Source: Setoptus koraiensis (Eukaryota; Animalia; Arthropoda). From it: a stretch of 64,000 nt of DNA. Below are positions 238 to 23,770 of this stretch, one piece after another. Every line of letters starts with the position of its first letter. Position 1 is the stretch's first letter. The translations under genes and the position numbers were made by a program. The stretch spans positions 10,230,001 through 10,294,000 of the forward strand of contig CM106585.1 in assembly GCA_048013815.1 (NCBI GenBank), in the 5' to 3' direction. Below the pieces are notes generated by a model. That model was not told where the DNA came from, made no database searches, and was given only the letters and a program-made list of their open reading frames with translations.

Positions 238-623
238 CTACTCCTCTACTTCAGTCTCATCGTCATCTATTGAGAAGACAAAAGTAAATTTCAGATTGTG
301 AGCTAGACTTTTTAGAAATTCAAGATTTTCTCGATTGCTTCGATCTTCATAAACAGATCTTATGCTTTGTTCGCGTCTAGCTAACGCTGTGTTTGGCGGG
401 ATGAGCTGGCCGGACTCCAATTTTTCTATCATTATCATCACAGCATGATCTTCATCTCTAAACAATCCAACACGACCATAAACTCCAAGATGCTTATGGC
501 CAGATAAGCAACCAAACCTGCAATACCACGCTTCCAATGCATTTTGAGTGCGAGGTAAGCTGCGATCCTTTAGTTCGCTCACTGACCACATCGCAGATGC
601 GAATTGGGGACCACTTCCGGTTC
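238..623 (-). mobile_element. MULE/Mutator-family transposase C-terminal fragment (5'-truncated)
   Basis: Translation PQFASAMWSV..LPRTQNALEAWY..GHKHLGVY..R..IRSVY..EFLKSLAHNL matches the invertebrate MULE C-terminal pattern (P.F...W / PRTNN..EGW / H / YL..IAHN). Homology stops at ~620, where chemoreceptor 3' flank sequence begins. Confidence 0.75.
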
Positions 624-855
624 CCCGAACATAGCAACGTAATAATTATACTACCATAATTTGATCATGCATGCACATTCAAACAATTGATAGAACTTTG
701 AGAGGATGGATCGCCTGACATAGCTGAGAACGTACTATAAACCTCAATGAGTTGCACCCTCTATATGCATGTCTTTATTGTGAATATTTATCGGATTCCT
801 ATAGTGTGAGCGTGGCGGTTTTGACTAGTTTACCGATGAATCGAAAGGAATTTGT

Positions 856-3016
856 TTATCTCAGATCTAGAGTGAAGGAGTATTGCAAGAATGTATACAC
901 TGCTGTTGTGATCCACACAAAAATCTTTGATAGGAAAATAGTTTAGAAAAAAAGTTGATCGTTAATAATTGATGCCACAAGAGTTGGTACTGATAAGGAT
1001 TTGGATAAATGAGTTTGCAAGAAAGATCATTATGAAACTTACTGTAAGAAAACGATCGTGCTTGATTGCGAAAGTACGAAACAAGACAAATGATGTGGCC
1101 GATCTAGATCGGAGATGCTCCGAGGTCTCTGTCAATGCGGATCTATTTCGTGGCTTCAGCAAGGACTGAGCTGATAGCAATATTAAATTCTCATTGATGA
1201 TTTTGTACTAGAATCATTTTTTTGTTTGATGTTGAGATTAAATGAAAAACAAATGTTCTTACAATTAGAAGAGCGATGAAAAATGATGAGAAAAGAGCAG
1301 TGAAGTAGACTGATCATTGTGCGAAATTACCCTTCGCGACAGCTGGGACAGGAAGAATATTTGACAAAACACATTGATCACGTAGCTAATACCAGCAAAG
1401 CCAAAGACCAGAAAAGTGATAGCCAGCCGTCCGGAACATATCGCACAATTATAGGCACTGACCATTGAGCTTAGAACCCAAGTGCATGAGCACAATGACA
1501 TAAATACATCTAAATCGGTTCTATCGGTGAATACTTCTTTCAGTATTTTCATTTCATACAATAGTTGATGCAAAACTATCAACATTTTTTCGCATTCCTC
1601 ATCACATGTTTGCAATCGCCAACGAAGAGAATCATCAAATGAGGTCTTCTTGCGTTCTTTTGCTCGATCTTCCAGTGGATATGTTGGATATGTCATTTCT
1701 TTTTCATTAAGATATGCAGAGAATGCTGGATTTGAGGCAGTTAGATTTCGGAATGATAAGTCCCGCTCCCTCTTCAGAGTAAATCCAACACAGTTAATAG
1801 AGCGCCCATAATGTTGGTGATACGAAATTTTGATCATGTTTAGTTGCTCAATGAATTCTGTTAATTGAGTATTATAAATAGATAATCTATTAGCAAAAAC
1901 AATTGCCACTTCCATAAGGAAATAAGAATCTCCGAAACTAATCAAATGCAGGCATACACCCATAAATATGTAAGCAGTTTTCGACCAAGCCAACAAACCA
2001 CCAGCGGTTTTGTCCGAATCAACTACGATAAGTGAAAGTCCAGGAGTATCAGTAGTGGTCCAGTAGTATTGCAGCGAAAAGAGCATCGGTATAACTATCA
2101 TAAGAACAAGTAAGAGAATTGTAACTCTAACTAGAGTCTTGTATACATGAGAGGCGCATAACACACCGTTGTGATGATGTATGGCCATCAAGTCGAAGCT
2201 AGATATATCTTGCTTATTCATTTCTTTCAATATTGGATATTCCTTGATTAAATATTCAGGCATGGGCCTGCTGAGCACAAAATAAAGAATGCACTCTTTC
2301 AAAGTAAATCTAGTAGAATGCAAGAATTCTTGGTATTGAATGAAATCGCTCACAAAACCAGTAGATGTGTCGGCGGATAATACTGGCGATGGAAAATAAG
2401 TATAGTCTGTGTTTCTACGACAATTCTTTTTGGCTACTTGATGTCTGAATAAGCAAAATAACCTTTCGGCAAAGTTGTTCAATCCATATAAGAATGATAT
2501 AATATTCAATCTTCTTCGATATTCTTTCATGGGGCCGAAAAGATCATACGTAAGTACTCTCCTGACTGTCAGCTTGTACGATTCGGTATCATTCCAAGTT
2601 TGCCGTGATTCTTCTATGTATTTGGACAGATTAAATCCGTTGTAGGATGTTTGCGAGAGCCAGATCATCAGGAAGATCATTTGTAAGAAGTGGAAGAATA
2701 GCCTCAATTTACAATGTCGATACATCACAATGAATACTCGCTGACCGGACCCGTACTCGACATCGTAATAATAGGGCATCCAAGAAAAGTTGCAGCAATG
2801 TGTGATTCTCATGGCCAAAGCAAACACGTTGAATTTTGCTCTATCGTTCCAATTCCCTTTTCCTCTATTGATGTCTGCGGAAGTCCCACGATCTAATATG
2901 TCCATTTTATATGAACTTGCCATGGTTGGTTGTTTAAATCCTGGACTCATGTCTGCTTCGATCGTTTCACCATTTATTAACTGATTCGGACTGTTTGGTT
3001 GTCCCGAGATAATCAT
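856..3016 (-). CDS. Gustatory-receptor-like 7TM ion channel, copy A (639 aa)
   Basis: Manual splice model complement(856..924,1043..1207,1331..3016). GT-AG phase-0 introns of 123 and 118 nt. Last exon IFVWITTAVYTFLQYSFTLDLR* resembles the GR S7b TYhhhhhQF motif. About seven hydrophobic segments. Confidence 0.75.
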
Positions 3017-3445
3017 TGGTCTTTAAAGAATAATGATTCTAGGAAAAAAATAATTGAGGGAAAAACACACAAACTCCAGTGAGCACTATCAACACAGCTC
3101 TACGGTATACCTATTTCGAGCTTAGATTGGCAAATGTCATCATATTAACTGTTTAATAGCGTGTTTCAATCAGGTTGAACTTTCGCGAAAAAGTTGCAAA
3201 AATCATTGAGAGAGCATAAGGGCTTGATTGGATTATAACACGTTAATGTGTAAATTGATTAGTTGGCGCATCAATATTATACCATCATCATCTGAGATGA
3301 ACTGTTTCGTGACGAAAATTCGAAGAAAATTTTGCTCGCGGGCACCCGAACATAGCAACGTAAACGTTATACTACTATAATTTGATCATGCATGCTGTAA
3401 CACTTGTACAATGCTTGACTTATTAAACTAGGGACTATTACTGTA

Positions 3446-3846
3446 CAGGGTGTCCCACGAAAGACCTGCATACTTTATTCTTGAATAACTTCAGATCCCC
3501 ACCGTAGGGGGCGCTCAACTTTTTTTTCAAGAGAATATGAGTCAAAGGAAATCTGTTGACAATGATTTCATCATTGTAAGTTGCACGATAGACCCATAAC
3601 ACGACTAAATGAAGAATTTTCGGTGTGAAAACTTCCTGAAAAACTGAACCTCTGCGCAGAATTCAGCGAAAATGTACCTTTGCTTATGGAAATGTTTCAA
3701 AACTTTTCGTGGCGCATAATGATAGAACCTTTACCAATAAATTTCCTTTGACTAATATTCTCCAGAAAAAAAAGTTGAGCGCCCCTACGGTGGGGATCTG
3801 AAGTTATTCAAGAATAAAGTATGCAGGTCTTTCGTGGGACACTCTG
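3446..3846. mobile_element. Non-autonomous Tc1/mariner-type MITE (401 bp)
   Basis: ~105-bp near-perfect TIRs starting CAG(G/A)GTGTCCCACGAAAGACCTGC (3446-~3552 and ~3741-3846). Flanked by TA at 3444-3445 and 3847-3848. No internal transposase. Confidence 0.92.
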
Positions 3847-4187
3847 TATATAGTGCCTGTGAATGGTTGCTACCATCATTTATTAACATGAGTTGAGTAT
3901 GAGTAGGAAATCGACCACGATTGGTCTCTGTACAAGGTTTATATAGTGAGAGATGGCAGCTTCATAGCTAAAAAGTGCGTAGCGCGACGTTTGAACGTTA
4001 CAATGCACATCCAAACAATTGATAGAACTTTGAGAGGATGGATCGCCTGAAATAGCTGAGAACGTACTATAAACCTCAATGAGTTGCACCCTCTATATGC
4101 ATGTCTTTATTGTGAATATTTATCGGATTCCTATAGTGTGAGCGTGGCGGTTTTGACTAGTTTACCGATGAATCGAGTGGAATTTGT

Positions 4188-6269
4188 TTATCTCAGATCA
4201 AGAGTGAAGGAGTATTGCAAGAATGTGTACACTGCCGTTGTGATCCATACAAAAAGCTATGATCATGTAGAATACATTTAGAATATTTGATTGCAAAAAT
4301 GATGATTAGTTTGATAAATATTTTTTTTGACAAGAATCAGATTATGAATGAGACAAATGAATATGAGACTAACTGTAGGAAAATGATCATGCTTGATCGA
4401 AAATGTCCGAAACAACACAAATGATGTGATCGATCTGCAACGGAGATGCTCAGATGTCTCTGTAAGCAAGCATCTATTTCGTGGCTTTAATACTCTTTGC
4501 GATGAGAGCGATACTAAATTTCCGTTGATAAGTTTAAACTGGGATCACATATCAGTCGCATCACGTAGATTCATGTCAAGACGTCATGAAAATGTCATAC
4601 AAACAAAAGTATGAATATTTTTATATGAGAGAGATGAAGTGGCGGTACAAAGATAAGGTTCTGAATTATGTTGATTTACCTTTTGTGATATTTGCGACAT
4701 GAAGAACAATTGACAGACCACATTGGTCATGTAGCTAAGACCAACAAAGCCAAAGACCAGAAAAGTAAGAGCTAACCGTCCGGAACATATCGCACAATTA
4801 TAGGCACTGACCATTGAGCTTAGGAGCCAAGTGCATGTGCACAATGAAATCAATATATCTAAATCAGTTCTATCGGTGAATACTTCTTTCAGTATTTTCA
4901 TTTCATACAATAGTTGATGCAAAACTATCAACATTTTTTCGCATTCCTCATCACATGTTTGCAATCGCCAACGAAGAGAATCATCAAATGAGGTCTTCTT
5001 GTATTCTGTTGCTCGATCTTCCAATGGATGAGATGGATATGATTGTCTTTTTCTCTCGGAATACAAAGAACATACCGGATATGAGACTCGATCTTGGATT
5101 TCGGAATTCACCTCGTTTTTCTCCGTGATATCACATTTTCTTAAAGGCCGACAGCTCAGAGCGTAAGTATTTGCTAAAATACTCAGTTGCTCGATAAGTT
5201 TCACTAATTGTATGTTGTAGATGAACAATCTGTTCGCAAGTATAACCGCCATCTCTGAAAGAAATTGAGAATCTCCGAAAGGGACAAAATTGAGAAGTAC
5301 TACGATGTAGAGATAACCAGTTTTTGACCAAGCCACGAAACCATTATCTAAAGTGATGTTATCCGTGTTGACTCTATATATAGATGGTCCACGGATGCTT
5401 ATAAGATAATAATATTCAATTGCAATAAACAGTGGTACAGCAAACAGCGTAATAATTAAGATACTCGTATATCTGACTAGAATCTTGTATATGTGAGAAG
5501 CGCATACAAATCCGTCGTGTTGATGTATGGCCATCAAGTCGAAGGTAGATATATCTCGCTGATTCATTTCTTTCAGTATTGGATATTCCCTAATCAAATA
5601 TTCAGGTATGGGCCTGCTGAGCACAAAATAAAGAATGAATTCCTTTAAGGTGAATCTAGTGGAATACATGAATTCTTCGTACCTAACAAAATCGCTCACA
5701 AAACTAGTAGATGATTCGCCGGATAGCATTGACTGTGGGAGATTGGTATATTCAGTAATTCCGCGGCTGCTTTTTCTTGCTACCTGGTGACGGAATAAAC
5801 AGAATAATCTCTGGATAAAATTGTTTAATGCATACAAGAATGTTACGATGTTTAATCTTCGTCGATAATCCTTAATTGGCCTGAACATGTCATAGGTGAG
5901 CGTGCTTCTAATAGCCATCTTATACCATTGGTAATTGCTAAATTCTTTCTCATTGCATTCCAGATATTCTGATAGATTGAATCCATTGTAGGATGTTTGT
6001 GAGAGCCAAACCATTATTAAAGTTATATGTAGACAATGCAAAAAAAGTCTAAATTTACAATTTCGGTACATAACAATGAAAATTCGTTGACCTGAACCAT
6101 ACTTGATATCATAGAAGTAGGGGCACCAAGCGAAGTTAAAGCAACTAAGCAATCGTATGGCCACAGCGAATACATTGAATTTTGTTGCTTCGCTTTGAAT
6201 CGCATTTTGTGTTCTCTTTACGAAGTCTTTGCCAAGACTTGATGTGCTGATCCCAATTAAGTTCGGCAT
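4188..6269 (-). CDS. Gustatory-receptor-like 7TM ion channel, copy B (607 aa)
   Basis: complement(4188..4256,4374..4538,4680..6269). Phase-0 introns of 141 and 117 nt. Last exon LFVWITTAVYTFLQYSFTLDLR*. Closest paralogue of copy A. Confidence 0.75.
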
Positions 6270-6741
6270 CTTTGATTCCCGGAATTAGAACGTCATATCC
6301 GTTTGAACCTAAACCATTCTATGAATGATCTTATCGAAAATGTCCCAAGAGAATGACTTTTCTTTGCTCGTTCTAGAATCTAGAATGATCGATGAACTGC
6401 ATGCAGCAAACTGTATAGATGCAGTTGTGCCACAGCATAGCTATTTTTGGAGGCGCACCGCAATTACGACAAATGGCAAATTTCATTTTGTCGACTTTCT
6501 AATGGCGTGCTCAAATGACATCACGCTTCCACTAAAAGTTAGTACCTGAGATGCAATTATCTATTTAGTGTGCAAGGCTCATGAGAGACTCTCAAATAAA
6601 TTTATTTTTACTTTTGGTTGCTATTACTTAGACGATTCAAAATGCGCACTGGAAAAGAAAATGTCTAATTTTGATCTGAGTGATAACATTCGAGAAACGC
6701 ATGATAGTGATTTGGTTCACTCCTTTTCTTACATACCATGC

Positions 6742-8800
6742 CTAATTCAATTCAAGAGCGTTAGAGAATTGCAAGCACGCATAAACTGCTGTCGTTATCC
6801 ACACGAAGAGCTGAAATTTAGATAGAGGGATTGGTCATGAAACAAATGCGAACAAAAATACTCGAAATGTGTCATTTTACTCACTTCGCACCGAGCAAAA
6901 ATCTGTTGGGTATAGTCTGGGTACTTACTTTGAGAAAATTTTCATTATTGACTGACACAGTTCGAAGCAGAACAAATGAAGTTTCAGATCCCGATCGAAG
7001 AAATTTGGATGTCTCGATTATCCAGTAACGAGTTTTCGGTTTCAAAATATGTTGTTCCACTAATAACAACAGAAGATTCCGATGGATAGTTTTGAACTCA
7101 TTTTTTTTCGGACAGAGTTGAGCGATTGATGTTGGTTGACGAAAAAGATAATTACTTAGAATGTTTTGATATATCAAGTTACCTTCAGCAGATAATTCTA
7201 TAAAAACGCAGCTTACTTTTTCAGCAATGCGAACCAAAAAGAATAATTGTAGGACAACATTGGCCAAGTAGAAATTCCCCATACAAGTGAATATAATGAG
7301 AGGCCATTTGGTGGTGCACGTTTTGCGATTGAAAGCAACTAACCACGTACCTAGAACCCATGTGTATGAACACACTGACATGAAGACATCTATGTCAGTT
7401 CTATCAGTAAATATTTCCTTCCACAGTTTAAATTCGAACAGTAGCTGATGCAGAATCATGACCATGCGTCTGCATTTCGAATCTAATGATCGCTGTGTTT
7501 TTATTTTGGATGTAACCGGTAGCGACGAAAGGCGTCTGTCATATCGAAAAAGCATCATATCATTATAGTTCTTAGAATAAGGATTTCTTGTTGGTGAGGT
7601 GTGGTAATGGCTCCCTTTTATTCTGTCCTTATGTCTCATAAACTGTGTTGGTTCATAATGATTGCTATCAGTGTTCAGATCGTTAGTCAAGATGTTCAGC
7701 TGCTCGATGAAATCGATCAATTGTATGTTATATATTGATAATCTGTCTGATAGTAGTATTGAACGACATATGAGTACAAATGATTCGATTACGGTGCTAA
7801 CATTCAGAAATACAAGCAGCATCAAGTCAATATGTTTGATACAGTAAACGAAAGTAGTCCCTTCAAAATAGTCATCCTGGCCATAAACTTTCAGTAAGAC
7901 AATGGTTAACTGTGAAAAAAAACAAGTTTCTAGCACTATGATTAGAAGGCCGACGATTGCTACTCGAACCAAGGTTTTGTATACTTTTGTCGAGCACCAC
8001 AGTCCTCCATCAATACATATTGCCATAAGATCGAATTCTATTATGTCCTTTTGTGTCATTTCCTTTAGAACAGGGTACTCTCTTGTGAGATGTTCGGGCA
8101 CAGGTCTATTGAGTAAACAATAAAGAATGTATTCTTTACAGGACAATTTCAAAGAGAATAAAAAGTCCCGGAGCATGATTATCTCACAAAAATTTGATCG
8201 AGATTTCTCATGCAGGAGATTTCCAATTATGCTAGGTCTTGAAGTTCTTTGCTTCTGGTATCTTAACAGACAATAAAGTCTTTGCGAAAAGGAGTTCAAT
8301 ACGAATGAGAAAACCAAAACATTCATCCTTCTACGATAGCCAGCGACTGAGCTCCACACATCATGAGTGATTATTTCTACGATCGCTGACCAGCAAAATT
8401 TTTTGACTTGAGATATTGGAATATTTGCATAATCCATGTTATCATTATAATTGGTTTGGCTTAAATAATTGCCAAAATATTTTGCCAGGCCGAATCCACA
8501 ATAGGCACACTTTAGAAGCCACATAAACAGGTATAGCATCTGGAGACTGCAAATGAGTGATCTCAACTTACTCTCCTTGTAAATAATAGTGAGAACCCGC
8601 TGTCCTGTTCCATACTTGCTTATCTCATAATATTGGGGAATCAAAGAGTAGTTAAAGTAGTCAATCAACAAGTAGCCCAAGTAGAAAGCATTAAATCTTC
8701 CCATTTTGCCATGAATTACATCTGCATTCTTCTGTCCATCATTGCTGGCTTCTTGACTGCCAACTGAATTAAATCTTGAGGTCGCTAAATTGATCGCCAT
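6742..8800 (-). CDS. Gustatory-receptor-like 7TM ion channel, copy C (606 aa spliced; 646 aa if intron 1 retained)
   Basis: complement(6742..6810,6929..7096,7217..8800). Intron 1 (120 nt) is in-frame, stop-free and has a weak GAG acceptor. Last exon LFVWITTAVYACLQFSNALELN*. Confidence 0.72.
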
Positions 8801-10601
8801 CTGAATGTCAGTATATAATAGTTAGTAGAAGTTTCGCGATGATTATGGATCGGATTATGAAGCGAATAGGGGTACTGGCATAAGAGTGCATCGTTGAATT
8901 TGTCTAGGTGTAGTCTACAAAATGAAGCGAAGAGCTACACAATCTCGTGCAATCGGCAATAAGTATTGCCAGCATCAAGACAGATTAAATTTATTGTAGG
9001 AAGTTTACGCTACTCATTTTGAAAAAAACTGTATAGAGTGTCTATTTTGCGATAAGCGCAAGTCAATAACGTGCTTAATTCTTTGGATACTGATCGCATC
9101 TCAATCTCACCCAAACTGCCTGACTCGTTCATCAAAAAGTCGCATAAAAATCATACACAAAAGTTTGGAATTTTTTGGCCTAGGTCGTGCTTATCTAGAC
9201 GTAGCATAAAGTTAGTGTGCCCGCTTGAATGGTTCGTAGAAACAAAGGAAATCTTAGGCCAATTGGCATAAATTCAGAACCTGTCTGACTAAAATGCCCC
9301 TACTGCTCGAATTAAAGATAACTGCGCTATCTAACACCTTTAACTAAACCGACAGAGATATTCGATTGTTTATTGGTCCGTCTAATCAATGCTAGCCTGA
9401 AATCATCAGTCCTAGTTTTATCAATCGACATGGGTCACGATTCTTTCAATGCGTATTACTCCTTGCACAATAGCGATATAGGATCTAAGCGATCGCATCA
9501 GTACTATTGCGATCAAATAAAAAATAAAATTCAGCTGAAATTTATGAGAGATGCCATAGAGATCGCATGAAAACTCGAGTGATTAATGAAGTCACGCACG
9601 AAGGTGTTATACGGAAGATATCATTCATTATCAAGAGAGAGGCACAGGCAAAACTCGAGATATGATTTCCGTTATATCGGCTATTCGTGCTTGGCATCAA
9701 AATCTTTGAGGGAAGAGAACTGTTTTTTTTTCCGAAAAAAGACCCACGTTGCCAATTCAGCGAGACATTCTTCGACGAAATAGAGTCAAGTAAAGAAAAT
9801 GGCCATTCGAGAAAAAATGAGAATATTCGCTTGATTTTTTTTCACCTTTTAGTTGGACAAATGTCCATGTTTGATTGATTCATTCTACGGAGGGAAATAT
9901 TTTTAGCATTTTGACAGATAGATGATGATTCTATGCTCTGTAGTTATTCTTCCATCGTTTCCACGAGATTAAATCGAGATATTGCGATTCAAAAGATTAT
10001 CTATCCCAGCGCCGGATAAAAAAGTTTACCATCATCTGGACTGCCCGTCTGCAGATCTTTACATCCTGTTTCTTCAAAAATCTTCTCTTTTTTTCTCTTC
10101 TTCTAACCATGTTAAGGCAAAAGTTTCTGCCAGGCTTGATATTTTGCAGATTGAATATATCCAAAAATTACTCAAGCACCACCGTCAAACTTTTAGAACC
10201 TGGCATTGAGAGACTCATCGCTATTTTGTATGAAACCTCTGACACATCGATCGAGAAGATCATCATTGACTCAGACCGTCAGAAATTGGTAGATTTCCAC
10301 TCTAACCTCGACGAAATTTTTAGCTTAAAATGCAACATCTTCTTAAAATCGTCTCCTAGAGTGAACACATCTGGAATGATTCCTGAATACCTCTCGACTT
10401 CCGATAAGTAATTGATCGGCAAAATTGTCTTTTCAACTTTCAGAGCTGATGCCTTGTCATCAATTTCAATGCTCGAGCTGATATAAATGAGGATTGTTTT
10501 ACCTTAGCAGCAACTCCGCTCGTTGATAGGAATCCCATGGCTTGAAAATCGCTACTGATCAAATTCAGACAAACACGATCTAATAAGATAAGTAACAATG
10601 T

Positions 10602-11015
10602 TTAATTTATGTCAATAGCACTGAAGAATTGTAAAAATGTATAAACTGCTGTTGTTATCCATACAATGAGCTAAAAATTAAAATATATAATATATTTAGA
10701 TCAAAAGTTGACAATGCCTCGATGAAACAATGAGCCCGATCAAAAAGTTTTAGTAGAGATTTTTTGATTTGAGCGGAACGAATCCCAATACTAACTTTGA
10801 GAAAATTTTCGTTTGTGACTGAAACAGTTCGCAATAGAACGAATTTCGTCTCCGAGCCTGATTGAAGATGTTTCGATGTCTCCATCAACCAATAACGAAT
10901 CCTTGGCTTCAACGTATGTTGTTCTACCAACAGAATCAAGATGCTTTGATTGATGAGCTTGAACTGATATACAACGAAATAGTTAATTTGAATTCAGAGC
11001 AGAAGATTTTATATT

Positions 11016-11086
<71 letters not shown>

Positions 11087-12625
11087 CACCTTTTGGGCTA
11101 TGCGGGCCAGAAAGAATACTTGTATGACGACATTTAGTAAGTAGATATTCCCCAAACTAACTACAATCACCAAAGGCCAGTTGCTGACACAATTCTTACA
11201 ATAGAAAGCAACTAGACAGACACTTAATATCCAAGTGTATGTGCAAAGAGATATAAGAATATCTATATCGGTCCTATCTGTAAATATCTCTTTTATCAAT
11301 TTAAATTCAAACAGGAACTGATGCAGAATCATAATCAACTTTTCACATCGAGTTTCAAACTGAGTTTGTTCCAACTGTGTTTGCGATAGATCAGGTAGTG
11401 TTTTCCTCCTGCTATTTTGGATAGCTATCATATCAAGATCGTTTTTCCTATGACCACAGTCTCTACGAGCTAGAGTTTGCTTTGATCTTTTCTCTTCCCT
11501 CTCCTCAGTGCAGTTGTAAAACTTCTTGAAATATGATAATTGGCTGACACCATTGTTATGACTGTTTCTTGCCGTGCGTAACTGATCAATAAAATGAATT
11601 AGTTGAATATTGTAAATATACAATCTACTTGACAGAATAACTGATGGAATCATCAATATAAAGGGATCACCCAAGCTGGCGACAGTGATTAATATTATCA
11701 ACATCATGTCGATTCTCTGTAGGCAGCAGATAAAGATGTTCCGCCCGAAGTAGCCACTTTGACCATAGGCATCTGCTAATAAGACTGGTATTTGTGGAAT
11801 AATAAAGGTTTCCAAAACTAGTACAGAGAGGCAAATGATGACAGATGTATGTAGATGCTTTAATACACTTGTATCGAAGAACGTTTTTGTGCTGTTTGAC
11901 CAACTCGGCAAATCTAAATCCAATAGATCCTTTTTGGTCATTTCCTTCATGAACGGATATTTTTTAATCAAATGTTCCGGGGCCGGTCGATTGGAGAAAC
12001 AAAAGACCCCCATCTCTCGCAATGTCAACTTGAATGAGAATAGAAACTCAAGAATTGCCATCATCTCATGAAGGTCGGATTTTGATTTCGAAAACTGTTT
12101 AATTATGCTGGGTCTTGATATTTCACGCTTCTGGTGTCTCAGTAAATTGAACAACTTCTGGGAAAAAGAGTTTAACAAAAAACTGAACAATACCAGATTG
12201 AGCCTCCTGCGATAATCATACACTGGACCCCATGGATCTTGAGTGAAGACTCTTCTGAATAACGAGCAGCATAATGTTTTATATCCTGTGTCGGTACCAT
12301 TGGGACTGCACAAATATTTTTCGAAGTGTCTCTCTAGACCAAATCCATTATAAGAAGTTCGAATGATCCAGGTGAATATATATAGCACTTGTATGCAATA
12401 TAGAAATAATCTTGGTCTATTTTCTCTGTAAATAACAGCGAATACTCGCTGGCCGGTTCCGAATTTATTGTCGTAGTAGTAAGAAATAAACGAAAAATTA
12501 AAATACTCGATCAGCAGATAGGCCAAACTGAACAAACTGAATCTTCTAGCTTTATATTGATTCATATCGATCTTCTTCCGCCCATTGTTTGTTTGACGAT
12601 CGGAAATATATGTGTGAGGCACCAT
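10602..12625 (-). CDS. Gustatory-receptor-like 7TM ion channel, copy D (590 aa)
   Basis: complement(10602..10670,10796..10963,11090..12625). Phase-0 introns of 126 and 125 nt. Last exon LIVWITTAVYTFLQFFSAIDIN*. Confidence 0.75.
11019..11084. repeat. (AG)33 microsatellite inside intron 1 of copy D
   Basis: Perfect 66-bp AG run. On the gene strand it reads (CT)n starting directly after the GTGAG donor. Confidence 0.97.
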
Positions 12626-13674
12626 CTCAAAATGAGCAAGAAATTGAATATTTATTGCAGCTTATTGAGGATGTAATTTCTCGGTTCGCGATGATCCACC
12701 AGCTTCGTGAAATTTGTGAGTTCCTTAGGTATCAGATTAGATAGATTTTTGATTTTAGACTTGACGTACATGTCTATTGCAAGTGTCAGAAAATCTCGAT
12801 TCTTTCATATTTTTCAAATCCATACTTGATAAAATTAATGACGGAACAAGCAAAAGACTGCGATTACTAATCATGCAGCATTAAAAGAAAATAAATTGGA
12901 ATCTATCGCGGAAGTCTTAATATTTAATCCTTTCTTTACTCTAAATTAAAACTCCATCAAAATCAGCATTGATAAAAATTTCGTGATCGATTGAGCATCT
13001 CAATCAATAAGAAAATGTCTCGAAATACCCTAGTGAATTCCATTGAAGTCAGAAATATTCGTCATAAGTCATGCATATCTAACGAAAAAATCCTTACTAG
13101 CAACAAAAGAATATGTTGATTGCCCATTGACGTGCCGTTATTATATAGGGCCACCAACCTCTGTGTTCAATTCAATGGCGCAGTTATCGCATTTATTTAG
13201 GCAATCATCATCACTGTCTGGATCGATGTAGCCAACTAGGATGGCCATTATTATCACAACGACTAAGATTCCGTGACAAAAATTGTCTGAAGCTCATTGA
13301 ATATTTCAATCTGTCATCCCTATTCCGCCATCGTCTTACTTTTATATATTTGATTGAATAAACACACAGAAGAAAAATATAAAACAAAAATTTGTGAATT
13401 ATTGAAATCATGTACACAACTTTCTCGGCATCCGATCTTCCTCATTTCATTCATAATCAGTGGCTGAAGTGTCAATCGATGTCCTATTCAGTGTGTCGTT
13501 CCTATTGTTTATATTGACTACTGTTTTTCCTTCAGAGTGCTGATGGTTCTTACATAAAGTTCATTTGGCTTTTCTGGGGTTTCTTGGGCAAACTGTCTTT
13601 ATTGGTGCCACCTACACCTGTGACCCTTTAGCACCAAAACATCGATAATCCATTGTCCTTTCTCCAAGTTTTGA

Positions 13675-15709
13675 TTATTTCAATTCTAGTGAATTGGAAA
13701 ATTGAACGAATGTATACGCTGCTGTCGTTATCCATACAATAAGCTAGAAAATACATATATATATTTTGTAATATATTTGATATGTGCATGATATTAGAAT
13801 AGCAAATTTCAAATATGGTTGTCATGCATAGAAATAATGTAGATATATATCACAGTTAAATCTTGAAAAAAACAATTTTATCTAGAGTGAACCATCTTTT
13901 AACTACCATACTCACTTTCAGTAGATTTTCATTTACCACCGACACAGTTCGAAACAGAACAAACGATGTTTCTGAACCTCTCTGGAGATGCCTGGATGCC
14001 TCCAACAGCCGATAACGAATTTTGGGGTCCAATATATCTTCTGCTAATAGCAACAAAATACATCGATCAACGGTTCTGAACTTTTGTGCGATTGGGTGAC
14101 ATGGAGTTATCATTTTAGGGGGAGAAGATTGCAAAGCTTTTTTTCAATAGGTCGACATAGATCGGTCATTGTTTAGCTGTGAGAAAAAGTCATCAGGATA
14201 GTCGCTCACCTTTTGAGATATACGGGCTAGAAAGGACACTTGATTGATGATATTGATCAGAAAGAAATTTCCCATTAATCCCATTAAAATCAGAGGCCAC
14301 TCTGATTTTTGTTTCATTGAAACTAGCCACACGCTGGACATCCAACTATATGTGGCCAATGATATCAGAACATCTATATCTGTCCTATCGGTAAACACCT
14401 GCCTCAATAGTTTGAATTCATGTAATAATTGATGCAGGAGCACAATCGAATGCTCACATTGTGTTTCAAAAGATCTTTGCAGCATAACTTGCGATGAGTT
14501 TTTTCGTCCGTTATTAACGTTACATGGTGGAGGAAAAGTGTTGCTTATCGGTGAAGTTAGCTCATTTCTATTGACTGTTTCTCCTTGATGCCAAATAAGC
14601 TGAGTCTGTTCGTGATGATTTGATCTACTCCTCGAGCTCTGTCTAACTGAACGCATTTGGTTAATGAGATGATTCAATTGAGTAGTGTAGATGTATATTC
14701 TGTTTGATATAATTACCGACGCAAGGACAAGTATGAATGAATCGGTCACAGTGGAAATATCCATGATTACCATCAGAAATATGTTGATATGCTCGAGAAA
14801 GTGCATGTCGCCATCAGATTGATAGAAATCCCCCAAATACGCTAGTGCCGCCGTAACAAAAAAACCTTCAAATAGTATCAGAAAGAGGCCAAATATGGTG
14901 GCTCTAACTAGATTCCTAAATATTTTTGGTGTGCAAAGCGAACCCCCGGGATGTTGTGCCTGTAATAAATCAAACTCTATTAAGTCTTGATAAGTCATTT
15001 CTCTTATAATAGGATTTTCTATCATTGCAGATTCAGACACAGGTCGATTTAAGCAATATTGAACGTAATCTTTAAACGATAATTTAAAATCAAAGACGCT
15101 CTTGATAAGCACGACTATCTCACAGATGTTTTCCGATGGATCGTCCATGAGAGATTTGATTAGGCTAGGTCTGGAAATCGTCGACCTCTGATGTCTCACC
15201 AGACAATACAATCTTTGAACGAGGCCGTTGAATGCGACGGAGAATGCCAATATATTAAGCCTCCTTCGAAAGTCTTGCCTAGGATGAAAATGATCCCATG
15301 TAAATATTTTTTCTATTGCCGACCAATAAAGATTCTCGGTACGAGATTCCGTATCATTGGTGCGACTGCTTGATGATTGGTCTAAATATTTCGCTAAATT
15401 GAATCCATTGTAGCCACTTCGACATACCCAAGTTAGCAAGATGAGGATCTGTAGACAGTATAGAAATAACTTTAATTTATTTTCCTTGTAAATGCCAGTG
15501 ATTACTCGTTGTCGGGGACCATTCTTTTGTTCATAATATTGAGGAACCATAGAGAAGTTAGAATGTTCAATCAGCAAGTAACCGATAAAGAACACGCTGA
15601 ATCTTATAGTATTACTCTGGTCTGTGCCCTCTCGTCTATTGTTTTTGGACAATTCAGTTATCCGAACGCCTTGAAATTTCGATCCTAATGGTATAGTGTC
15701 ACCCGCCAT
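13675..15709 (-). CDS. Gustatory-receptor-like 7TM ion channel, copy E (577 aa)
   Basis: complement(13675..13743,13916..14080,14210..15709). First ATG at 15709 (the ORF track start at 15742 is TTG). Introns of 129 and 172 nt. Last exon LIVWITTAAYTFVQFSNSLELK*. Confidence 0.73.
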
Positions 15710-16885
15710 ATCAATTGATTCGGCGATAATCGGCTGCAACAATGAAATGATACTATATGAAGGGTCACCAGGGAAATGTTAATTGAAAATGTATGCCTTC
15801 AACGACTCTCTATAAAGAATATTCAAGATATTCACAGTATATCCACTTTTTGAGTGGGAATCATAATAGTCAAACGACCAAAATTGATGGTTGTGGACAG
15901 AGTGAAAGGAGTTCTCTATATATCTCAATGAATGTTTAATACTCAGTTCTTGGAATTGCCACCGCAGATTATTAAAATGGTATTCCTGTGATGATGCAGC
16001 TCTAACTCCTATCTGTGTATTTGTTTGACCATTATTAGCGGACAAATCTGATTAGTCCTCAATTATGATATCGCATCGATTTACTCATCCACAACTATAT
16101 GGAGACAAATTCAATGTCTTGATCTAGTGAATATCATAGAAAGATTTCTGGTGTCAATTTTAGTGGGTCCATCAGTACTAGTGAATAGAAAAATGGATGA
16201 CAAGATTTGGAGGACTCTTGTACAGAAACACTGAACTCGATTGAATAGTATGCAGTCAGACGCTATATGTTCAGTCGCAGATTGATCAATGGCATGCCAT
16301 ATAATGGTGAGAAGGCATACACTCAAAACTGAATTAAAGTTCGTCTGAGATATGAGCGCAAATTGATGTGAAAAGCTGCAGAATAAGGCTCGAGTCAGCA
16401 TCGATTATTAGCTAACGGCACGTAAGTAGCGTATTTTATAGAGAGGTTCATGGTCGGGAATGAAAGCTTGAACAGTCACGAACCTACATGAACTTTGCAA
16501 TCACCATCTCGATCATCAAACGGGTTGATTGTTCGCCCGATTTACATAAGCTTGATAAAATTGCATGTTTGGATACAGAAATCTGAGCTGATACTAAAAG
16601 ACGTCAAAATACCGTATACATTTTAATCTACAAGCGTGTGAATTTTCATTACATTACCGGTAATTAGTTTGGTATTCAGGGCGAGTCACTAGAGTTGCTC
16701 AAGTCGATAAGAAGATGCAATCCCACAAATGTAGCCCAAAGTGATTATCGAGTGGCTTGATTCATTCTATCTGATTGGTATTTTCGTCTGAAAAGAATGC
16801 ACCCTCTCCAACAAGTCACCGAAATAATTGGCTCAAATAAGAATTTTCCTAGTTCATTCAAGCTTGAAGCTTATATCGGCTGTTT

Positions 16886-18884
16886 TCAATTCATGTCTAA
16901 TGCGATGGAGAATTGTAAGAATGTATAGACTAACGTTGCTGTCCATGCAAAGAGCTGGGAATAACGTTGAAGAGTGATATGGATAGATTTTTGTGTTAGT
17001 AGGATGAGAAAGTGGTTCGATGGAAGTAGGAATCATCCGAAATAGATTTATTATGGTTACATAACGCAGTAGAGTATCAGAGTGCATCATAGGAACTCCT
17101 AAACTGTAATACTTACTTTAAGAAAATTTTCATTATTGACTGGTACAGTCCGAAACAAAAAAAATAATGTCTCGGATCCTGATTGCAGATGCGCGGATGT
17201 CTCCAGAATCAAGTATCGACTTTTCGCGTTCAGTAAATGCTGCTCCACCAGTACCGACAAAAGATTTCTATTAATATGTTTGAACTAATTTGAATTTGTA
17301 GCGGAAGAAAAGACTGGTCTTTGTTCTCAGATATATCAAGGAAAATACTAAAAGTCAACTATTTAGGTTGGGTTGCAGAGAATAGCTCACCTTTTCTGCT
17401 AATTTAGCTAGGAAGAATATCTGATTGATGATGAAGAGCAAAAAAAAAGTACCCACAACAATAAATACAATCTGAAGCCATCTAGAGTTATATGAATCGC
17501 AATCATGAGCAACTAGCCAAGTGCTTAGTACCCAAGCAAATGAGCACAATGATAAAAGAACATCGATGTCAGTTCTATCAGTGAATAATACCTTCACTAA
17601 TTTGAATTCTGACAATAGCTGATGCAAATGAAGAATCAATCGTTCACACCGTGCGTCCAACGATTGTTGTGGTATGGTTTGTGAGGGCTCGCGATGCATG
17701 TAAATTGAAATTCCATTGTGGAGAAAGTTTCTCAGAACTCCAATTCTCTGGCCCCGTCGATAGCTTATTGATAGTGATCGTCCAGAATAGTAGTTGTTGC
17801 TTCTATTATTTCCGTAATTGTTCCGCAAAGTGCGCAGGTGCTCAATAAACTCTATTAATTGAGAATTGAAAATTACTGATCTATCCGATACAATAGCCGA
17901 AAGTCCAACGAGAACGAAAGAATCAGCCAATGTGCAGGCATTCAGCCATATTACTAGCAACATGTCACACAACTTGAATGCATTTTGAAGATGGCTTCCG
18001 AAATTCAGTCGATTTATATACACCATTACAATCGCGTAACAAACCAATTGGAACATAACTAATGCTCCGCTGATAAAGGCACATTGGGTAAATATCCGGA
18101 ATAATTTTGCTGTGCACAACAATCCATTGTTTTCATGCATCGACATCAGGTCGAACTCTAATATATCTTCTTTTGTCATTTTCTTCAAAATTGGATGCTT
18201 TCTGATGAGATTTTCCGGCATCGGCGTATTGAGGAAACAGTAGCGCATGTATTCTTTGAATGATAATTTCAATGAAAATATGAAATTCATCAAGGACCTT
18301 ATCTCACCAATGTTAGAATTCGCATATACAAGATTTCCAATCATGTAGGGCCTCGAAACTAGGGAATTCTGGTGTCTTATTAGGCAGTGGAATCTTTGAA
18401 TGATTGAGCCAAGCGTAAATGTGAACACGAGTATGTTTATTCTCTCCCGATAATCAGTCATGGATTCGAATACATCGAATGTGAACACTTCCTTAGCAAA
18501 TGACCAAATTAATTTAGGAGGGCTGGATTCGGCGTTGTCCTCATAATTCGGATTGCTCGAATTTTTTCCGCTCAAATATTTGGCCAGATGAAAGCCATTG
18601 TACGCACTACGAGACAGCCAACTTAACAAATAAAGCATTTGCATGGAATACAGTGAAAATCTTATTTTACTGTGTCTATATACAGCAATGAATACTCGTT
18701 GTTCTGATCCGTATTTGGTGCCAGTCTCAAGAAAGTGAGGAATCAAATTCATGTTACATTGCTGAACAAACTTATAATACACATGAAATATACTGAACCT
18801 ATAGATTCGTCGATTTGCATTGTTTCGCAGATTGATTCGAACACTATTCGAGTTTAATCTTGATAGAAGATTGTTGAGCGCCAT
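16886..18884 (-). CDS. Gustatory-receptor-like 7TM ion channel, copy F (576 aa)
   Basis: complement(16886..16954,17117..17284,17391..18884). Introns of 106 and 162 nt. Exon 2 FKHINRNLL..NENFLK. Last exon LFAWTATLVYTFLQFSIALDMN*. Confidence 0.75.
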
Positions 18885-20092
18885 ATCAAAATCAGTTTTA
18901 GCAATTTTAATCAGTTGGTGTAGATCTTATAAATTTATTATGGCTAAACAAAAGGTATTTTAATCAGTTTAATTCATATATACATTTATTCTTACACTAA
19001 GTATGGGCGAAAACAGTTGATGGCTTTGAAAATCGCTGTAAAATGATTCTCAGAAGTGATTATTCGAACGAATTCCCAGAAGCAAGGCTGTTTAGATATC
19101 TAGTCTTTATCGCAGGATGCTGAGAACAAACGAATGATGAGGGACCAAAGAATGTCAGGTTTGCGTGCGCGATTGATAGCAGTACGGGATATTTATTGTC
19201 TTCGTTTGCCTCTCTTTCTTTATTAGTACTTACCCTATTGGTGTAATATAACCATATATTGAGGAGTTACTCGTTAGCTGCTGTCATCAAAGAGATGCTG
19301 ATGCTATTACAGAGATGCCGTGCAGAGAATCATTTTATTAGAATGACACGATCCGCTCAAAAATTTATTATTCAAGTTTTGCTCACCAGCGTCTTTTCCT
19401 CGAATCATTAAATATTCCATCAGTTATTGGTGAAAATTCAAGCTATCACGACGCCTCTGGTGTTCATCACCAATCAGTCAAATTTTACTTTGACTACCAT
19501 TGAGAAATTCCCATTGATTGATATACTATTGATTTGAATAGATCACAGCAATCGATCTAGCGGCAAATCAAGCGAGTCAGAATAAAGATGAGACGAAAAT
19601 ATCGATCGCTAAATCGCTTGCGGAAGTCTCATCAGCAATCGGCTATCTGAGATTTCCAATCAATGCTAACATGTAAAATGTATTTCGTCAAATTTCCACT
19701 CTCGAACTTTTTTGCCGCGATGCGTCATTGGTTGTTCCCTAGTTCAGTACTAGAATTCAGTATCCTTTTAAAATCTGAGCTCTTCCTGATGATAATAACA
19801 TGCGAAGTCTCAAGTGAATCTCTTCAGATTATTCTAAAGAGCTAGTTCACTCTACTATTGTCGTCAGCACTCCAGGCCCTTGTTGCAGGAATGAAAAATT
19901 TTAGTCTACAGTCGATCTCGTGAATTTTCGCGCGCGCTATCATCAGAGATGCAATATTATTTTATATTTTGATTTCATTTCATTATGATCACAATTGATA
20001 GTTCTTTGGTTTTTATCGAATAAACAGCATCTATTTTAGAGCGATACTCTAGATTCCGTATTTCTAACAACATTTAATTATTGACAAGCCAT

Positions 20093-23000: not shown

Positions 23001-23770
23001 ATGATAGCTCATCCCTGAATTCTTCATCATTGGGAACAACAACATCGGCCAGTGCTACGCAAAATTCCAGCGATGACGACAGTCAAATCTTAGACGAGAA
23101 AGGTCATAAAGGTGGCCGCCGAAATGGTAAACGATTCTTGACTAGGATTGCCCAAAAATATCTAGAACATAGGGGCCTCGATCCAGACACAAACCTCCAA
23201 CTGAGCCCAAATAAAATTGCTGGTGATCTTAAAGCCGAGCTCAAATTAGAGCTAAAATCACTTTTTGATTATTCATTGCCGGATTTGGTGGTGCACCGTC
23301 GATTCGATCTCACTGTTACATCCATGCACAAAATTCTGCTCACTCCCGCCTCAAATCACAATAACAACACTCAATACAACCGGACCAAAGACCATTCATT
23401 TGATCAAAATTTACCGAGCTTAGAGCCGTTCAAACCGCCACGTTTACAGTTGTTCGCAGCATTACGTTTTGTCAGGCCAGAGCGAAAAACTCTGCAAAAC
23501 TTAGCCAAACCATTGTCGGTACTTAATTTGAACCATAAAGTTTTGTCTGATGCAAACAAAAAGAAGGATCAGACTGAGCAAGATCGTAAAGCCGAGAAGA
23601 GGAGCACTGACACTATTATCGGCGTTGATAATGATGCAATGAGATCAACCATGAATCCAATAAATGCCATAATTAAAAGGGAAGATGAACATGTTCAGTT
23701 GAAGATGATGAAAAAAATTATCGCTGACGAGATTGCAGCAAAGCATCTGCCCATGTTGGATATTAGTTGA
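20093..23770 (+). CDS. ESYT: Divergent extended synaptotagmin-like protein (TM hairpin + SMP + C2 domains), 1225 aa, intronless
   Basis: N-terminal hydrophobic hairpin. SMP-domain motifs WLNKIIQCCWPY and FNFTLLDLPTINY. C2A start PIPAGICLIHLIEAVNL and VNPFWGYSF. Degenerate second C2 (SAIVTLYLD). ATG at 20093 (20081 is TTG). Confidence 0.75.
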   Translation: MMSSRPNQEYNFDSIHKDNTKATIMDPNIIERYKVPRKKIIFVYMTSKALWFSTITCVLLCHHFISTYNIFIYTLFIITILLPIQYHLAGYESFRNTHNVLHHLRHSRKKRDEFLQIITDTTTFDLPQYGSSSNYQSNYGTGLGQNKIANTDAKIITDVDHDTLMRLSSPVKRIITFKPTDRLYRCEYDQVGVSHVWLNKIIQCCWPYLAEYLQGEIEKLSIDNPKGIKLDNGSQRIKFEQFQLGHTAPVIKKITLNKEGLRNDELVFDIQLLYSGNFLMSILYKYLYFFSSRAGIKDVFLRFNMRVQLRPIVDSSPFIGGLNFTLLDLPTINYTGLNLGEVAELKFVRILMMNLIGAYLLQPESISIPWGKPANLLTQELMHEAKSECVKSMKKQIMLSRTGSKVEDTRKWSGKQSRRVQKPPSKRNKRATRYTDLSFLAPSELAGTLGTRLQGNNKNVDKESRKLKNIMSKLTEQQKGDLMKTSTRAIRDNDSLFINDWERDVRCPIPAGICLIHLIEAVNLPMVSSTVMKMFQSTKPNSFCSVLIGKHLFNTPIAHGTVNPFWGYSFAAPVHDIYDKIKLSTFDRRKFLADRPIGTVEFSIASMLNSSASNQKSGQQSATNTFKKLKNGGDCWLRLTNADASIDNQYVISDWQTTNQLDKCTSKSIKLASSMNASYIHIRLAFAQLDTKWKLYNLDNMEALEICPPIDISYSPRLLISEVSGHGAGNGQIGAASATIRKVDPYDRLIKGHKSKRHANNQSCAIALSRKHPFPSAIVTLYLDCVDRFNDDLKHSKHYKSYMPHLEVSLNSQKYTDIDCNKYDPNFKNWPIGRQLNLLSNDVNKDVINIKFRGSVYFNSKSTMKYNQRLRDRQFRMANIAPIINLQIDQQTAVSSGGTSELATIMSNTSSLASSATDSDSQYSKLSHFTEPTRKNKQQPTDHKKKTVIPTISVNEHKIERAAKYSKPKYDSSSLNSSSLGTTTSASATQNSSDDDSQILDEKGHKGGRRNGKRFLTRIAQKYLEHRGLDPDTNLQLSPNKIAGDLKAELKLELKSLFDYSLPDLVVHRRFDLTVTSMHKILLTPASNHNNNTQYNRTKDHSFDQNLPSLEPFKPPRLQLFAALRFVRPERKTLQNLAKPLSVLNLNHKVLSDANKKKDQTEQDRKAEKRSTDTIIGVDNDAMRSTMNPINAIIKREDEHVQLKMMKKIIADEIAAKHLPMLDIS

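What the first reader, a model, noticed from the sequence alone, without database searches (positions are those of the whole stretch)
856..18884. Hidden six-gene tandem array of oversized gustatory-receptor-like 7TM ion channels
Seen: six same-strand genes share an identical 3-exon layout (large exon 1, 55-56-codon exon 2, 23-codon exon 3, both introns phase 0). The ORF track misses exon 3, which carries W-x-T/A-T-x-x-Y-x-x-x-Q-[FY]. Known: arthropod GRs end in an S7b TYhhhhhQF motif with conserved phase-0 introns near the C-terminus, and typically run ~350-450 aa. Inference: these 576-639 aa proteins are a highly diverged, locally expanded GR/7TMIC subfamily that standard HMM searches could miss. 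All six look intact, which implies selection. This matters especially if the host is an eriophyoid, a group reported to have very few GRs.
Basis: partly seen in the sequence, partly recalled or inferred. Interest (0 to 1): 0.8.

Follow-up and report, generated by a model that had tools for sequence, protein, structure and literature searches.

The report
Hidden gustatory-receptor-like channel gene array
Six neighbouring genes in this eriophyoid-type mite genome encode unusually long, fast-evolving proteins that no sequence search recognises but whose predicted fold matches insect smell and taste receptor channels, so these tiny mites may have more chemoreceptors than BLAST-based counts suggest.

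Summary
Six intact minus-strand paralogs (576-639 aa) share one 3-exon plan: exon 1 of about 500-560 codons, exon 2 of 55-56 codons, exon 3 of 23 codons including the stop. Both introns are GT..AG, phase 0, 106-172 nt.

Exon 3 carries W-[ILV]-T-[TS]-[AG]-V-Y-x-x-x-Q-[FY] once after every gene, here and in a related species. It reads as T-A-hhhhh-Q-F, a variant of the GR TM7 motif.

No RNA run was available, so the junctions rest on conservation (ortholog dN/dS 0.24-0.32; exons 2-3 conserved, introns not). The full spliced protein, including TM7, could not be folded.

The host is eriophyoid-like. The family has at least 21 genes in one sister species and is not found elsewhere by sequence. First readers of this scan noted three similar arrays and one truncated copy elsewhere in this genome (unchecked). 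Channel or chemoreceptor function is inferred, not shown.

The parts
1331..3016 (-). G1 exon 1 (562 codons from the first ATG)
   Evidence: family HMM E 3e-182
1043..1207 (-). G1 exon 2 (55 codons); intron 1 is 123 nt, GT..AG, phase 0
856..924 (-). G1 exon 3 (22 codons plus stop; IFVWITTAVYTFLQY...); intron 2 is 118 nt
4680..6269 (-). G2 exon 1 (530 codons)
4374..4538 (-). G2 exon 2 (55 codons); intron 1 is 141 nt
4188..4256 (-). G2 exon 3 (22 codons plus stop); intron 2 is 117 nt
7217..8800 (-). G3 exon 1 (528 codons). Intron 1 (7097-7216, 120 nt) is in frame and stop-free, so the raw ORF runs on into exon 2.
6929..7096 (-). G3 exon 2 (56 codons)
6742..6810 (-). G3 exon 3 (22 codons plus stop); intron 2 is 118 nt
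11090..12625 (-). G4 exon 1 (512 codons); intron 1 (126 nt) is mostly a (CT)n microsatellite
10796..10963 (-). G4 exon 2 (56 codons)
10602..10670 (-). G4 exon 3 (22 codons plus stop); intron 2 is 125 nt
14210..15709 (-). G5 exon 1 from the first ATG (500 codons; the mechanical ORF starts at a TTG at 15742)
13916..14080 (-). G5 exon 2 (55 codons); intron 1 is 129 nt
13675..13743 (-). G5 exon 3 (22 codons plus stop); intron 2 is 172 nt
17391..18884 (-). G6 exon 1 (498 codons). Residues 21-498 were modelled, giving TM0/S0, TM1-TM6 and a conserved insert of about 90 aa between TM2 and TM3.
17117..17284 (-). G6 exon 2 (56 codons); intron 1 is 106 nt
16886..16954 (-). G6 exon 3 (22 codons plus stop; LFAWTATLVYTFLQF...); intron 2 is 162 nt

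Best explanation
The six genes are a tandem array of a lineage-restricted, fast-evolving family within the seven-transmembrane ion channel (7TMIC) superfamily that holds insect gustatory and odorant receptors.

Shown here:
- The three-exon gene models are intact and conserved.
- Exon 1 folds, in prediction, into an N-terminal short helix plus six long helices that superimpose on OR and GR cryo-EM structures. These include the long TM4, TM5 and TM6 that form the cytoplasmic anchor domain.
- The family is under purifying selection but accumulates amino-acid changes several times faster than the two neighbouring housekeeping genes compared (dN 0.21-0.34 against 0.04-0.09).
- The array order is conserved with a sister species.

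Inferred:
- Exon 2 supplies the end of TM6 and the cytoplasmic TM7a. Exon 3 supplies the pore-lining TM7b with a T-A-hhhhh-Q-F/Y variant of the GR motif.
- The proteins assemble as tetramers and act as ligand-gated cation channels, most likely chemoreceptors of the mite.
- The extra length relative to ordinary GRs comes from a conserved cytoplasmic insert of about 90 residues between TM2 and TM3, a first extracellular loop of about 55 residues, a long disordered IL2 and an N-terminal tail.
For: Gene models:
- GT..AG, phase 0 and no internal stops.
- Exactly six copies and six exon-3 motifs in the window.

Structure, model mab3f16599ed3 (pLDDT 75.7, pTM 0.72):
- Foldseek against PDB is led by AaegOR10 (probability 0.99, TM 0.41/0.49), followed by other ORs and Orco.
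- AFDB clusters named 'Gustatory receptor' score probability 0.97-1.00, including models with a Tetranychus-style accession and unnamed models.
- Swiss-Prot gives LITE-1, Gr66a, ORs and Orco.
- In the ESM Atlas shape search the only good hit is a cluster that is 96% 7tm_7: TM 0.49/0.61, 299 residues, rmsd 4.7.
- An independent, poorer model of G3 also had ORs on top.

Other lines:
- Language-model features of G2 and of a 33-43% identical relative both land on 7tm_7, DUF267 and DUF3537 clusters.
- Helix lengths are 34, 66, 58 and at least 30 residues for TM3-TM6.
- Loop lengths and net charges fit an N-in topology.
- Ortholog dS is 0.87-1.06, close to housekeeping dS of 0.73-0.86. dN/dS is 0.24-0.32. 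Exons 2-3 have dN 0.10-0.24, and introns are not conserved.
- The 7TMIC criteria and the phase-0 intron before the TM7 exon are taken from PMC9998090 and bioRxiv 10.1101/2023.08.30.555482.
Against: - No sequence method links the family to GRs. Pfam finds nothing in 26 members even at E<=10, nor in exons 2 and 3 scanned alone. A PDB profile search finds nothing. A profile search of 1.84 billion representatives finds only family members.
- Foldseek E-values are not significant (0.07-2) and TM-scores stay below 0.5 on the query side.
- The modelled protein lacks TM7, so the split TM7 and the pore were not seen.
- The canonical tyrosine of TYhhhhhQF is replaced by A or G.
- No transcript evidence exists for the junctions.
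- No functional or expression data exist. Some 7TMICs (PHTF, LITE-1, many Grls) are not known chemoreceptors.
Confidence: 0.78

Rival explanations
1. The proteins do have the 7TMIC fold but are not chemoreceptors. They might serve another sensory role (light, as in LITE-1, or temperature, as in Gr28b-type receptors) or a non-sensory membrane role. The conserved cytoplasmic insert of about 90 residues would then couple to an unknown partner.
For: LITE-1 is the best Swiss-Prot Foldseek hit. The IL1 insert is conserved and confidently modelled (pLDDT about 90) and has no counterpart in ordinary GRs. Benton & Himmel note that most cryptic Grls and PHTF have no known chemosensory role.
Against: Tandem arrays, birth-and-death dynamics (the G1/G2 duplication) and dN several times the housekeeping level are the usual signature of environmental receptor families. 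At least 21 paralogs in the relative are more than a housekeeping role would need.
Confidence: 0.17
2. The resemblance to ORs and GRs is a generic arrangement of long helices. On this view the family is an unrelated multi-pass membrane protein, for example transporter-like.
Against: The ABC hits have probability 0.1-0.47 and TM 0.12-0.22, against 0.75-0.99 and 0.34-0.49 for ORs. They are a known false-positive class in 7TMIC screens. All eight PDB 7TMIC hits rank first, with full-length alignments and a gap of 3-6 Z units to the rest. Independent language-model features, the C-terminal T..QF motif and the phase-0 intron before the last exon all point the same way.
Confidence: 0.04
3. The small exons are not used: each gene ends shortly after the long ORF, and the downstream conserved pieces are non-coding elements or relics.
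For: No transcript data exist.
Against: All 17 database relatives and all six window ORFs end their conserved part at the same codon, which is followed by GT, and the read-through tails are unrelated. Exons 2 and 3 keep frame, length (55-56 and 22 codons) and AG/GT boundaries in the relative's genes wherever they could be located. They show dN well below dS while introns drift. Without exon 3 the protein would lack its seventh helix.
Confidence: 0.01

Closest known systems
Arthropod gustatory receptors (Pfam 7tm_7 / Trehalose_recp; structures BmGr9 8vc1, DmGr43a 8jm9, DmGr64a 8jme)
   Different: There is no HMM match. The proteins are 576-639 aa against about 350-450. They carry a conserved insert of about 90 aa between TM2 and TM3. 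The motif is T-A/G-hhhhh-Q-F/Y, with the Tyr shifted two residues towards the C-terminus. EL2 is very short, about 5-12 residues.
Insect odorant receptors and Orco (7tm_6; MhOR5 7lic, AgamOR28 8v3d, AaegOR10 8v02, ApisOR5-Orco 8z9a, Orco 6c70)
   Different: ORs are an insect-specific branch of the GRs, and a mite protein cannot be a member. There is no 7tm_6 HMM match and no OR-type C-terminal sequence.
Cryptic Drosophila Grl proteins (Benton & Himmel 2023, PMC9998090)
   Same: Both are taxonomically restricted, invisible to sequence searches and recognised only by fold. Some keep a phase-0 intron before the TM7 exon and a variant motif T(H/N)(S/A)hhhhQ(Y/F/W). This is the same kind of discovery.
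   Different: Grls are single genes of ordinary length in flies. This is an expanded mite family (six genes here, at least 21 in the relative) with extra domains.
The two canonical GRs reported in Aculops lycopersici (aculy03g00430, aculy03g06080; PMC7738191)
   Same: They come from the same mite superfamily and, on the reading here, the same protein superfamily.
   Different: Those are detectable by InterPro or BLAST; these are not. A direct comparison was not possible because no sequences were available by reference.

Membership tests
7TMIC superfamily | Seven transmembrane helices | tested here: inconclusive
   Six long helices plus an N-terminal short helix appear in the exon-1 model. A seventh hydrophobic segment is encoded by exon 3 (Kyte-Doolittle peak in four of the six genes, G3-G6). 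No dedicated topology predictor was available and no model of the spliced protein could be made.
7TMIC superfamily | [quoted passage not shown] | tested here: inconclusive
   Family-wide net charge is about +2 to +3 for the N-tail, IL1 and IL2, and about -1.5 to 0 for EL1-3. N-x-S/T sequons fall in EL1 in five of six paralogs. This is consistent but rests only on simple counts.
7TMIC superfamily | Intracellular loops longer than extracellular loops | tested here: met
   Mean lengths are IL1 97 and IL2 46 (plus helix extensions) against EL1 55, EL2 11.5 and EL3 7.
7TMIC superfamily | Long TM4, TM5 and TM6 projecting into the cytoplasm (anchor domain) | tested here: met
   The model has helices of 66 residues (278-343), 58 residues (383-440) and at least 30 residues (448-477, cut at the exon boundary). 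The most conserved block, LHQLLxEFK..FTDRTDxD, lies in the cytoplasmic part of TM5.
7TMIC superfamily | Split TM7 (cytoplasmic TM7a, pore-lining TM7b) | not testable with these tools
   The spliced protein has no reference and could not be submitted. The only model that included exon 2 (through the in-frame intron of G3) had pLDDT below 55 there.
7TMIC superfamily | N-terminal re-entrant helix (TM0/S0) | tested here: inconclusive
   Helix 12-23 of the model aligns from residue 4-20 of the OR chains. It is hydrophobic, but membrane insertion was not assessed.
Arthropod GR family (Pfam PF08395 7tm_7 / PF06151) | Match to the family HMM | tested here: not met
   No 7tm_7, 7tm_6 or Trehalose_recp hit in six plus 26 exon-1 translations at E<=1 and E<=10, nor in exons 2 and 3 alone. 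Caveat: the joined C-terminus, where the HMM is strongest, could not be scanned.
Arthropod GR family | TM7 motif TYhhhhhQF | tested here: inconclusive
   All genes have T-[TS]-[AG]-V-Y-x-x-x-Q-[FY]. Anchored on QF, the T at Q-7 and the Q-F/Y are kept, while the Y at Q-6 is A or G. This compares with the accepted variant T(H/N)(S/A)hhhhQ(Y/F/W) of Gr36/Gr59c/d.
Arthropod GR family | Phase-0 intron(s) near the 3' end, one just before the TM7 exon | tested here: met
   Two phase-0 introns are present, and the second lies 10 codons before the motif's T at Q-7 (the second T of the TT pair). They are conserved across the family. Positional homology to the ancestral GR introns was not tested by alignment with GRs.
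Arthropod GR family | Phylogenetic placement inside GRs | not tested
   No GR sequences were available by reference, and sequence identity is too low (7-15% in structural alignments).
Ligand-gated tetrameric cation channel (function) | Tetramer with a TM7b-lined pore; ligand-evoked current | not testable with these tools
   Needs AlphaFold-Multimer on the spliced protein, and electrophysiology.

The most novel reading that the evidence does not exclude
Eriophyoid mites, held up as animals that have almost lost chemoreception (two GRs in A. lycopersici), in at least one lineage carry a cryptic, expanded family of oversized GR-derived channels (20 or more genes). These channels have a new conserved cytoplasmic domain inserted between TM2 and TM3 and a rewritten pore motif. 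On this reading, chemoreceptor counts based on BLAST or HMM searches in miniaturised or fast-evolving arthropods are systematically too low, and the insert marks a new mode of regulation or coupling for 7TMIC channels.
Probability: 0.35. Interest if true: 0.75.

Novelty: new variant of a known kind. Interest (0 to 1): 0.62.

Why it matters
Insect-type chemoreceptors are among the most divergent protein families known, and repertoire counts drive conclusions about ecology. One example is the claim that minute specialist mites have nearly abandoned chemosensation.

This family was invisible to Pfam and to HMMER searches of billions of proteins, and in the tools used here only structure prediction and language-model features recognised it. 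It adds six genes here. At least 21 exist in the sister species. Unchecked notes from this scan describe three more arrays and a truncated copy in this genome.

It also offers a natural variant of the 7TMIC channel, with an extra cytoplasmic domain and an altered TM7 motif, that can be tested for gating and assembly. Eriophyoids are crop pests and virus vectors, so their host-finding receptors are of practical interest.

Tried and rejected
- Pfam on exon-1 ORFs, on 26 family members at E<=10, and on exons 2 and 3 alone gave no relevant hit.
- A profile search of PDB sequences gave only a chance hit to ATP synthase subunit b, E 1.2.
- A profile search of 1.84 billion representatives found only 16 family clusters and no bridge to GRs.
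- A word-indexed search with the 23-sequence profile was swamped by candidates and returned two known members.
- The first AF2 model (G3 read through its in-frame intron, 17-row alignment) was poor (pLDDT 53) and its Foldseek PDB list was meaningless. VIA on that model already put ORs first.
- RNA evidence was not obtainable. Both run searches returned only DNA contigs, and the 'joints' seen when contigs were laid on the window were cross-mapping between paralogs G1 and G2.
- JGI metagenome scans with protein patterns and with a degenerate exon-3 DNA pattern gave no family member. The one DNA hit was a chance match.
- Synteny of the flanking 1229-aa SMP/C2 gene with a 1237-aa gene next to P0003 was rejected: the two proteins are unrelated.
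- Submitting the spliced full-length protein to folding or to Pfam was left out. It has no reference and would have had to be typed.
Full report
**Observation**

The region 856-18884 holds six long ORFs on the minus strand. Reading the DNA downstream of each and assembling models in a script gave the same plan six times:
- exon 1 of 498-562 codons;
- a GT..AG intron of 106-141 nt;
- exon 2 of 55-56 codons;
- a GT..AG intron of 117-172 nt;
- exon 3 of 22 codons plus the stop.

Both introns are phase 0. The products are 639, 607, 606, 590, 588 (577 from the first ATG) and 576 aa, with no internal stop.

The exon-3 pattern W-x-[TAS]-[TAS]-x-x-Y-x-x-x-Q-[FY] occurs six times in all six frames of the 64-kb window. 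Each occurrence follows one of the six ORFs. A family HMM finds six members and no fragments.

One detail explains the odd 639-aa ORF of G3. Its intron 1 is in frame and free of stops, so the mechanical ORF runs through into exon 2.

**Are the small exons real?**

No RNA data could be brought to bear. Both run searches returned only contigs that cover introns and spacers evenly, meaning DNA. The two 'joints' were cross-mapping between paralogs. The evidence is therefore comparative.

- All 17 database relatives and all six window genes lose similarity at the same codon, which is followed by GT. Their read-through tails are unrelated.
- In the relative's contigs, exon 2 and exon 3 were found with AG/GT boundaries wherever enough downstream sequence was available: eleven full-length exon 2 copies of 56 codons and nine exon 3 copies. 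This includes members only about 20% identical to the window genes.
- Between four collinear ortholog pairs, dS is 0.87-1.06 for three pairs and 2.1 for the partial G6/P0002 pair. The three values are close to the housekeeping neighbours (AASS 0.73, NAP 0.86). dN is 0.21-0.39 and dN/dS is 0.18-0.32.
- For the three pairs that could be split by exon, exons 2 and 3 have dN 0.10-0.24 and 70-81% nucleotide identity. The introns sit at 55-65%, near background.
- Paralog comparisons agree.

**What the proteins are**

Sequence methods are blind here.
- Pfam gives nothing relevant for any of 26 members, even at E<=10, nor for exons 2 and 3 alone.
- A profile search of PDB sequences gives nothing.
- An exhaustive HMMER profile search of 1.84 billion cluster representatives returns 16 clusters, all at E<1e-30, and then nothing.

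Language-model features of G2, and independently of relative P0003, put arthropod 7tm_7 clusters and other 7TMIC families (DUF267/SRR, DUF3537, 7tm_6) on top, with scores of 0.94-0.95.

The first AlphaFold2 model was G3 read through its intron with 17 alignment rows, and it was poor (pLDDT 53). I then gathered all relatives and extra paralogs from their contigs. With these I modelled exon 1 of G6 without its first 20 residues, using 26 rows. The result had pLDDT 75.7 and pTM 0.72.

VIA-align against 48,161 PDB cluster representatives ranked these eight first:

|---|---|
| MhOR5 | 15.2 |
| AgamOR28 | 14.8 |
| AaegOR10 | 14.7 |
| ApisOR5-Orco entry 8z9a | 14.4 |
| ApisOR5-Orco entry 8z9z | 14.3 |
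| DmGr43a | 12.8 |
| DmGr64a | 12.6 |
| BmGr9 | 12.1 |

The other structural libraries agree.
- Foldseek against PDB is led by ORs (probability 0.99-0.75), with non-significant E-values. That is typical of true 7TMIC pairs according to Himmel et al..
- AFDB clusters give 'Gustatory receptor' models at probability 0.97-1.00.
- Swiss-Prot gives LITE-1, Gr66a, ORs and Orco.
- The ESM Atlas shape search gives a single good match, a cluster that is 96% 7tm_7: TM 0.49/0.61, 299 residues, rmsd 4.7.
- Even the poor first model had ORs on top.

**Anatomy**

In the G6 model, counting model residues:
- a short hydrophobic helix (12-23), aligned to the N-terminal S0/TM0 of ORs;
- TM1 (44-77);
- an EL1 of about 50 residues with a helix, carrying N-x-S/T sequons in five of six paralogs;
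- TM2 (126-149);
- a conserved, confidently modelled region of about 90 residues with short helices (150-238);
- TM3 (239-272);
- a very short EL2;
- a 66-residue TM4 (278-343);
- a disordered IL2;
- a 58-residue TM5 (383-440);
- a short EL3;
- TM6 (448-477), cut at the exon boundary.

Family-wide loop lengths and net charges fit an N-terminus-inside topology with long cytoplasmic loops.

The most conserved blocks are the NFSWxPYYYD loop before TM1, the cytoplasmic part of TM5 (LHQLLxEFK..FTDRTDxD) and exon 3. This matches the reported 7TMIC pattern of conserved anchor and pore regions.

By position, exon 2 should complete the TM6 extension and form TM7a, and exon 3 should form TM7b. Anchored on Q-F, the exon-3 motif reads T-A/G-hhhhh-Q-F/Y. 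The T and the QF of the GR signature TYhhhhhQF are kept, and the Y is replaced. This resembles the accepted variant of Gr36/Gr59c/d and Grl36a/43a. The phase-0 intron just before this exon parallels the ancestral GR intron.

The extra length over ordinary GRs comes from the N-tail, EL1, the TM2-TM3 insert and IL2.

**Host and distribution**

The neighbouring lysine-ketoglutarate reductase/saccharopine dehydrogenase gene (AASS) was used to place the host.
- It is 93% identical to a protein from Logan sample SRR33593474.
- It is 64-70% identical to a block of proteins that includes Aceria tosichella and an 'Olea europaea' entry that is probably a mite contaminant.
- It is at most 55% identical to non-eriophyoid mites, ticks and spiders.

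The window is therefore eriophyoid or very close to that group.

Every family member whose contig I checked comes from that one sister-species sample, as does the AASS ortholog contig. That species has at least 21 members.

A tree shows collinear orthology:
- G6-G5-G4-G3 correspond, in gene order, to P0002, L001:3168, L001:6498 and P0001 on one contig. The G3, G4 and G5 pairings are well supported; G6 sits in an unresolved group with P0002 and P0003.
- G1 and G2 are a lineage-specific duplicate of the P0008 type.

No member was detected in the other eriophyoid-like genomes in the databases or in JGI metagenomes. Because dN here is several times the housekeeping rate, this absence may reflect divergence beyond recognition rather than true absence.

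A. lycopersici was reported to have only two GRs, from BLAST and InterPro searches (PMC7738191).

Unchecked first-reader notes of this scan describe three further arrays and one truncated copy elsewhere in the same genome.

**Mechanism and limits**

The best reading is a family of GR-like 7TMIC subunits that form tetrameric, ligand-gated cation channels and serve chemoreception.
- Shown: the gene structure, selection, the predicted fold of TM0-TM6 and the array's conservation.
- Inferred: the TM7a/TM7b split, tetramer formation, channel activity and chemosensory role.

The full spliced protein could not be folded or scanned, because it has no reference and typing long sequences was excluded.

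I rate this a new variant of a known kind. It is a sequence-orphan, oversized and expanded branch of the 7TMIC superfamily, analogous to the cryptic Drosophila Grls.

Noticed in passing
window 671-931 vs 4003-4263; 1316-1615 vs 4665-4964: G1 and G2 are a mosaic. Exon 3 plus about 190 nt of 3' flank is 96% identical and the end of exon 1 is 89% identical, but the 5' parts are only 71-80% identical. This suggests gene conversion, or a younger partial duplication, at the 3' ends.
   Followed up: partly
window about 11010-11085 (intron 1 of G4): A (CT)n microsatellite fills most of the intron. Read-through of the ORF gives an SLSLSL... tail.
   Followed up: no
window 7097-7216: Intron 1 of G3 is 120 nt, in frame and stop-free, so intron retention would insert 40 residues into the TM6 extension instead of truncating the protein.
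   Followed up: no
G6 residues about 170-258 (window about 18110-18375, minus strand) and the equivalent in all members: A conserved region of about 90 residues between TM2 and TM3 (KLSLKEYIxYC..RPxPExL..YPILKxMT..DxxxFDL), modelled at pLDDT about 90, with no Pfam match. It is the main family-specific addition to the 7TMIC core.
   Followed up: partly
window 29761-32040 and 32097-32771 (minus strand); L010 2334-3029 and 3026-5335: The AASS gene appears as two ORFs (AlaDh_PNT_N part and the rest) in both species, probably separated by a short intron. AASS and NAP are neighbours in both species (synteny).
   Followed up: no
same genome, 1.56, 4.17 and 9.57 Mb beyond the window and on another piece: First-reader notes s1-314239, s1-314247, s1-325875 and s1-307654 describe further arrays of 'oversized GR-like' genes, one of them with a TM7 signature changed to SG/TG (compare WITSGVY in relative P0016). 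If correct, the family has about 20 or more genes in this genome.
   Followed up: no
window 238-591 (minus strand): A 117-aa ORF just downstream of G1 with no similarity to the family. It was not examined further.
   Followed up: no
window 20081-23770 (plus strand): A 1229-aa ORF with SMP_LBD and C2 domains (extended-synaptotagmin-like), head-to-head with G6. It is unrelated to the 1237-aa ORF next to P0003 in the relative.
   Followed up: partly
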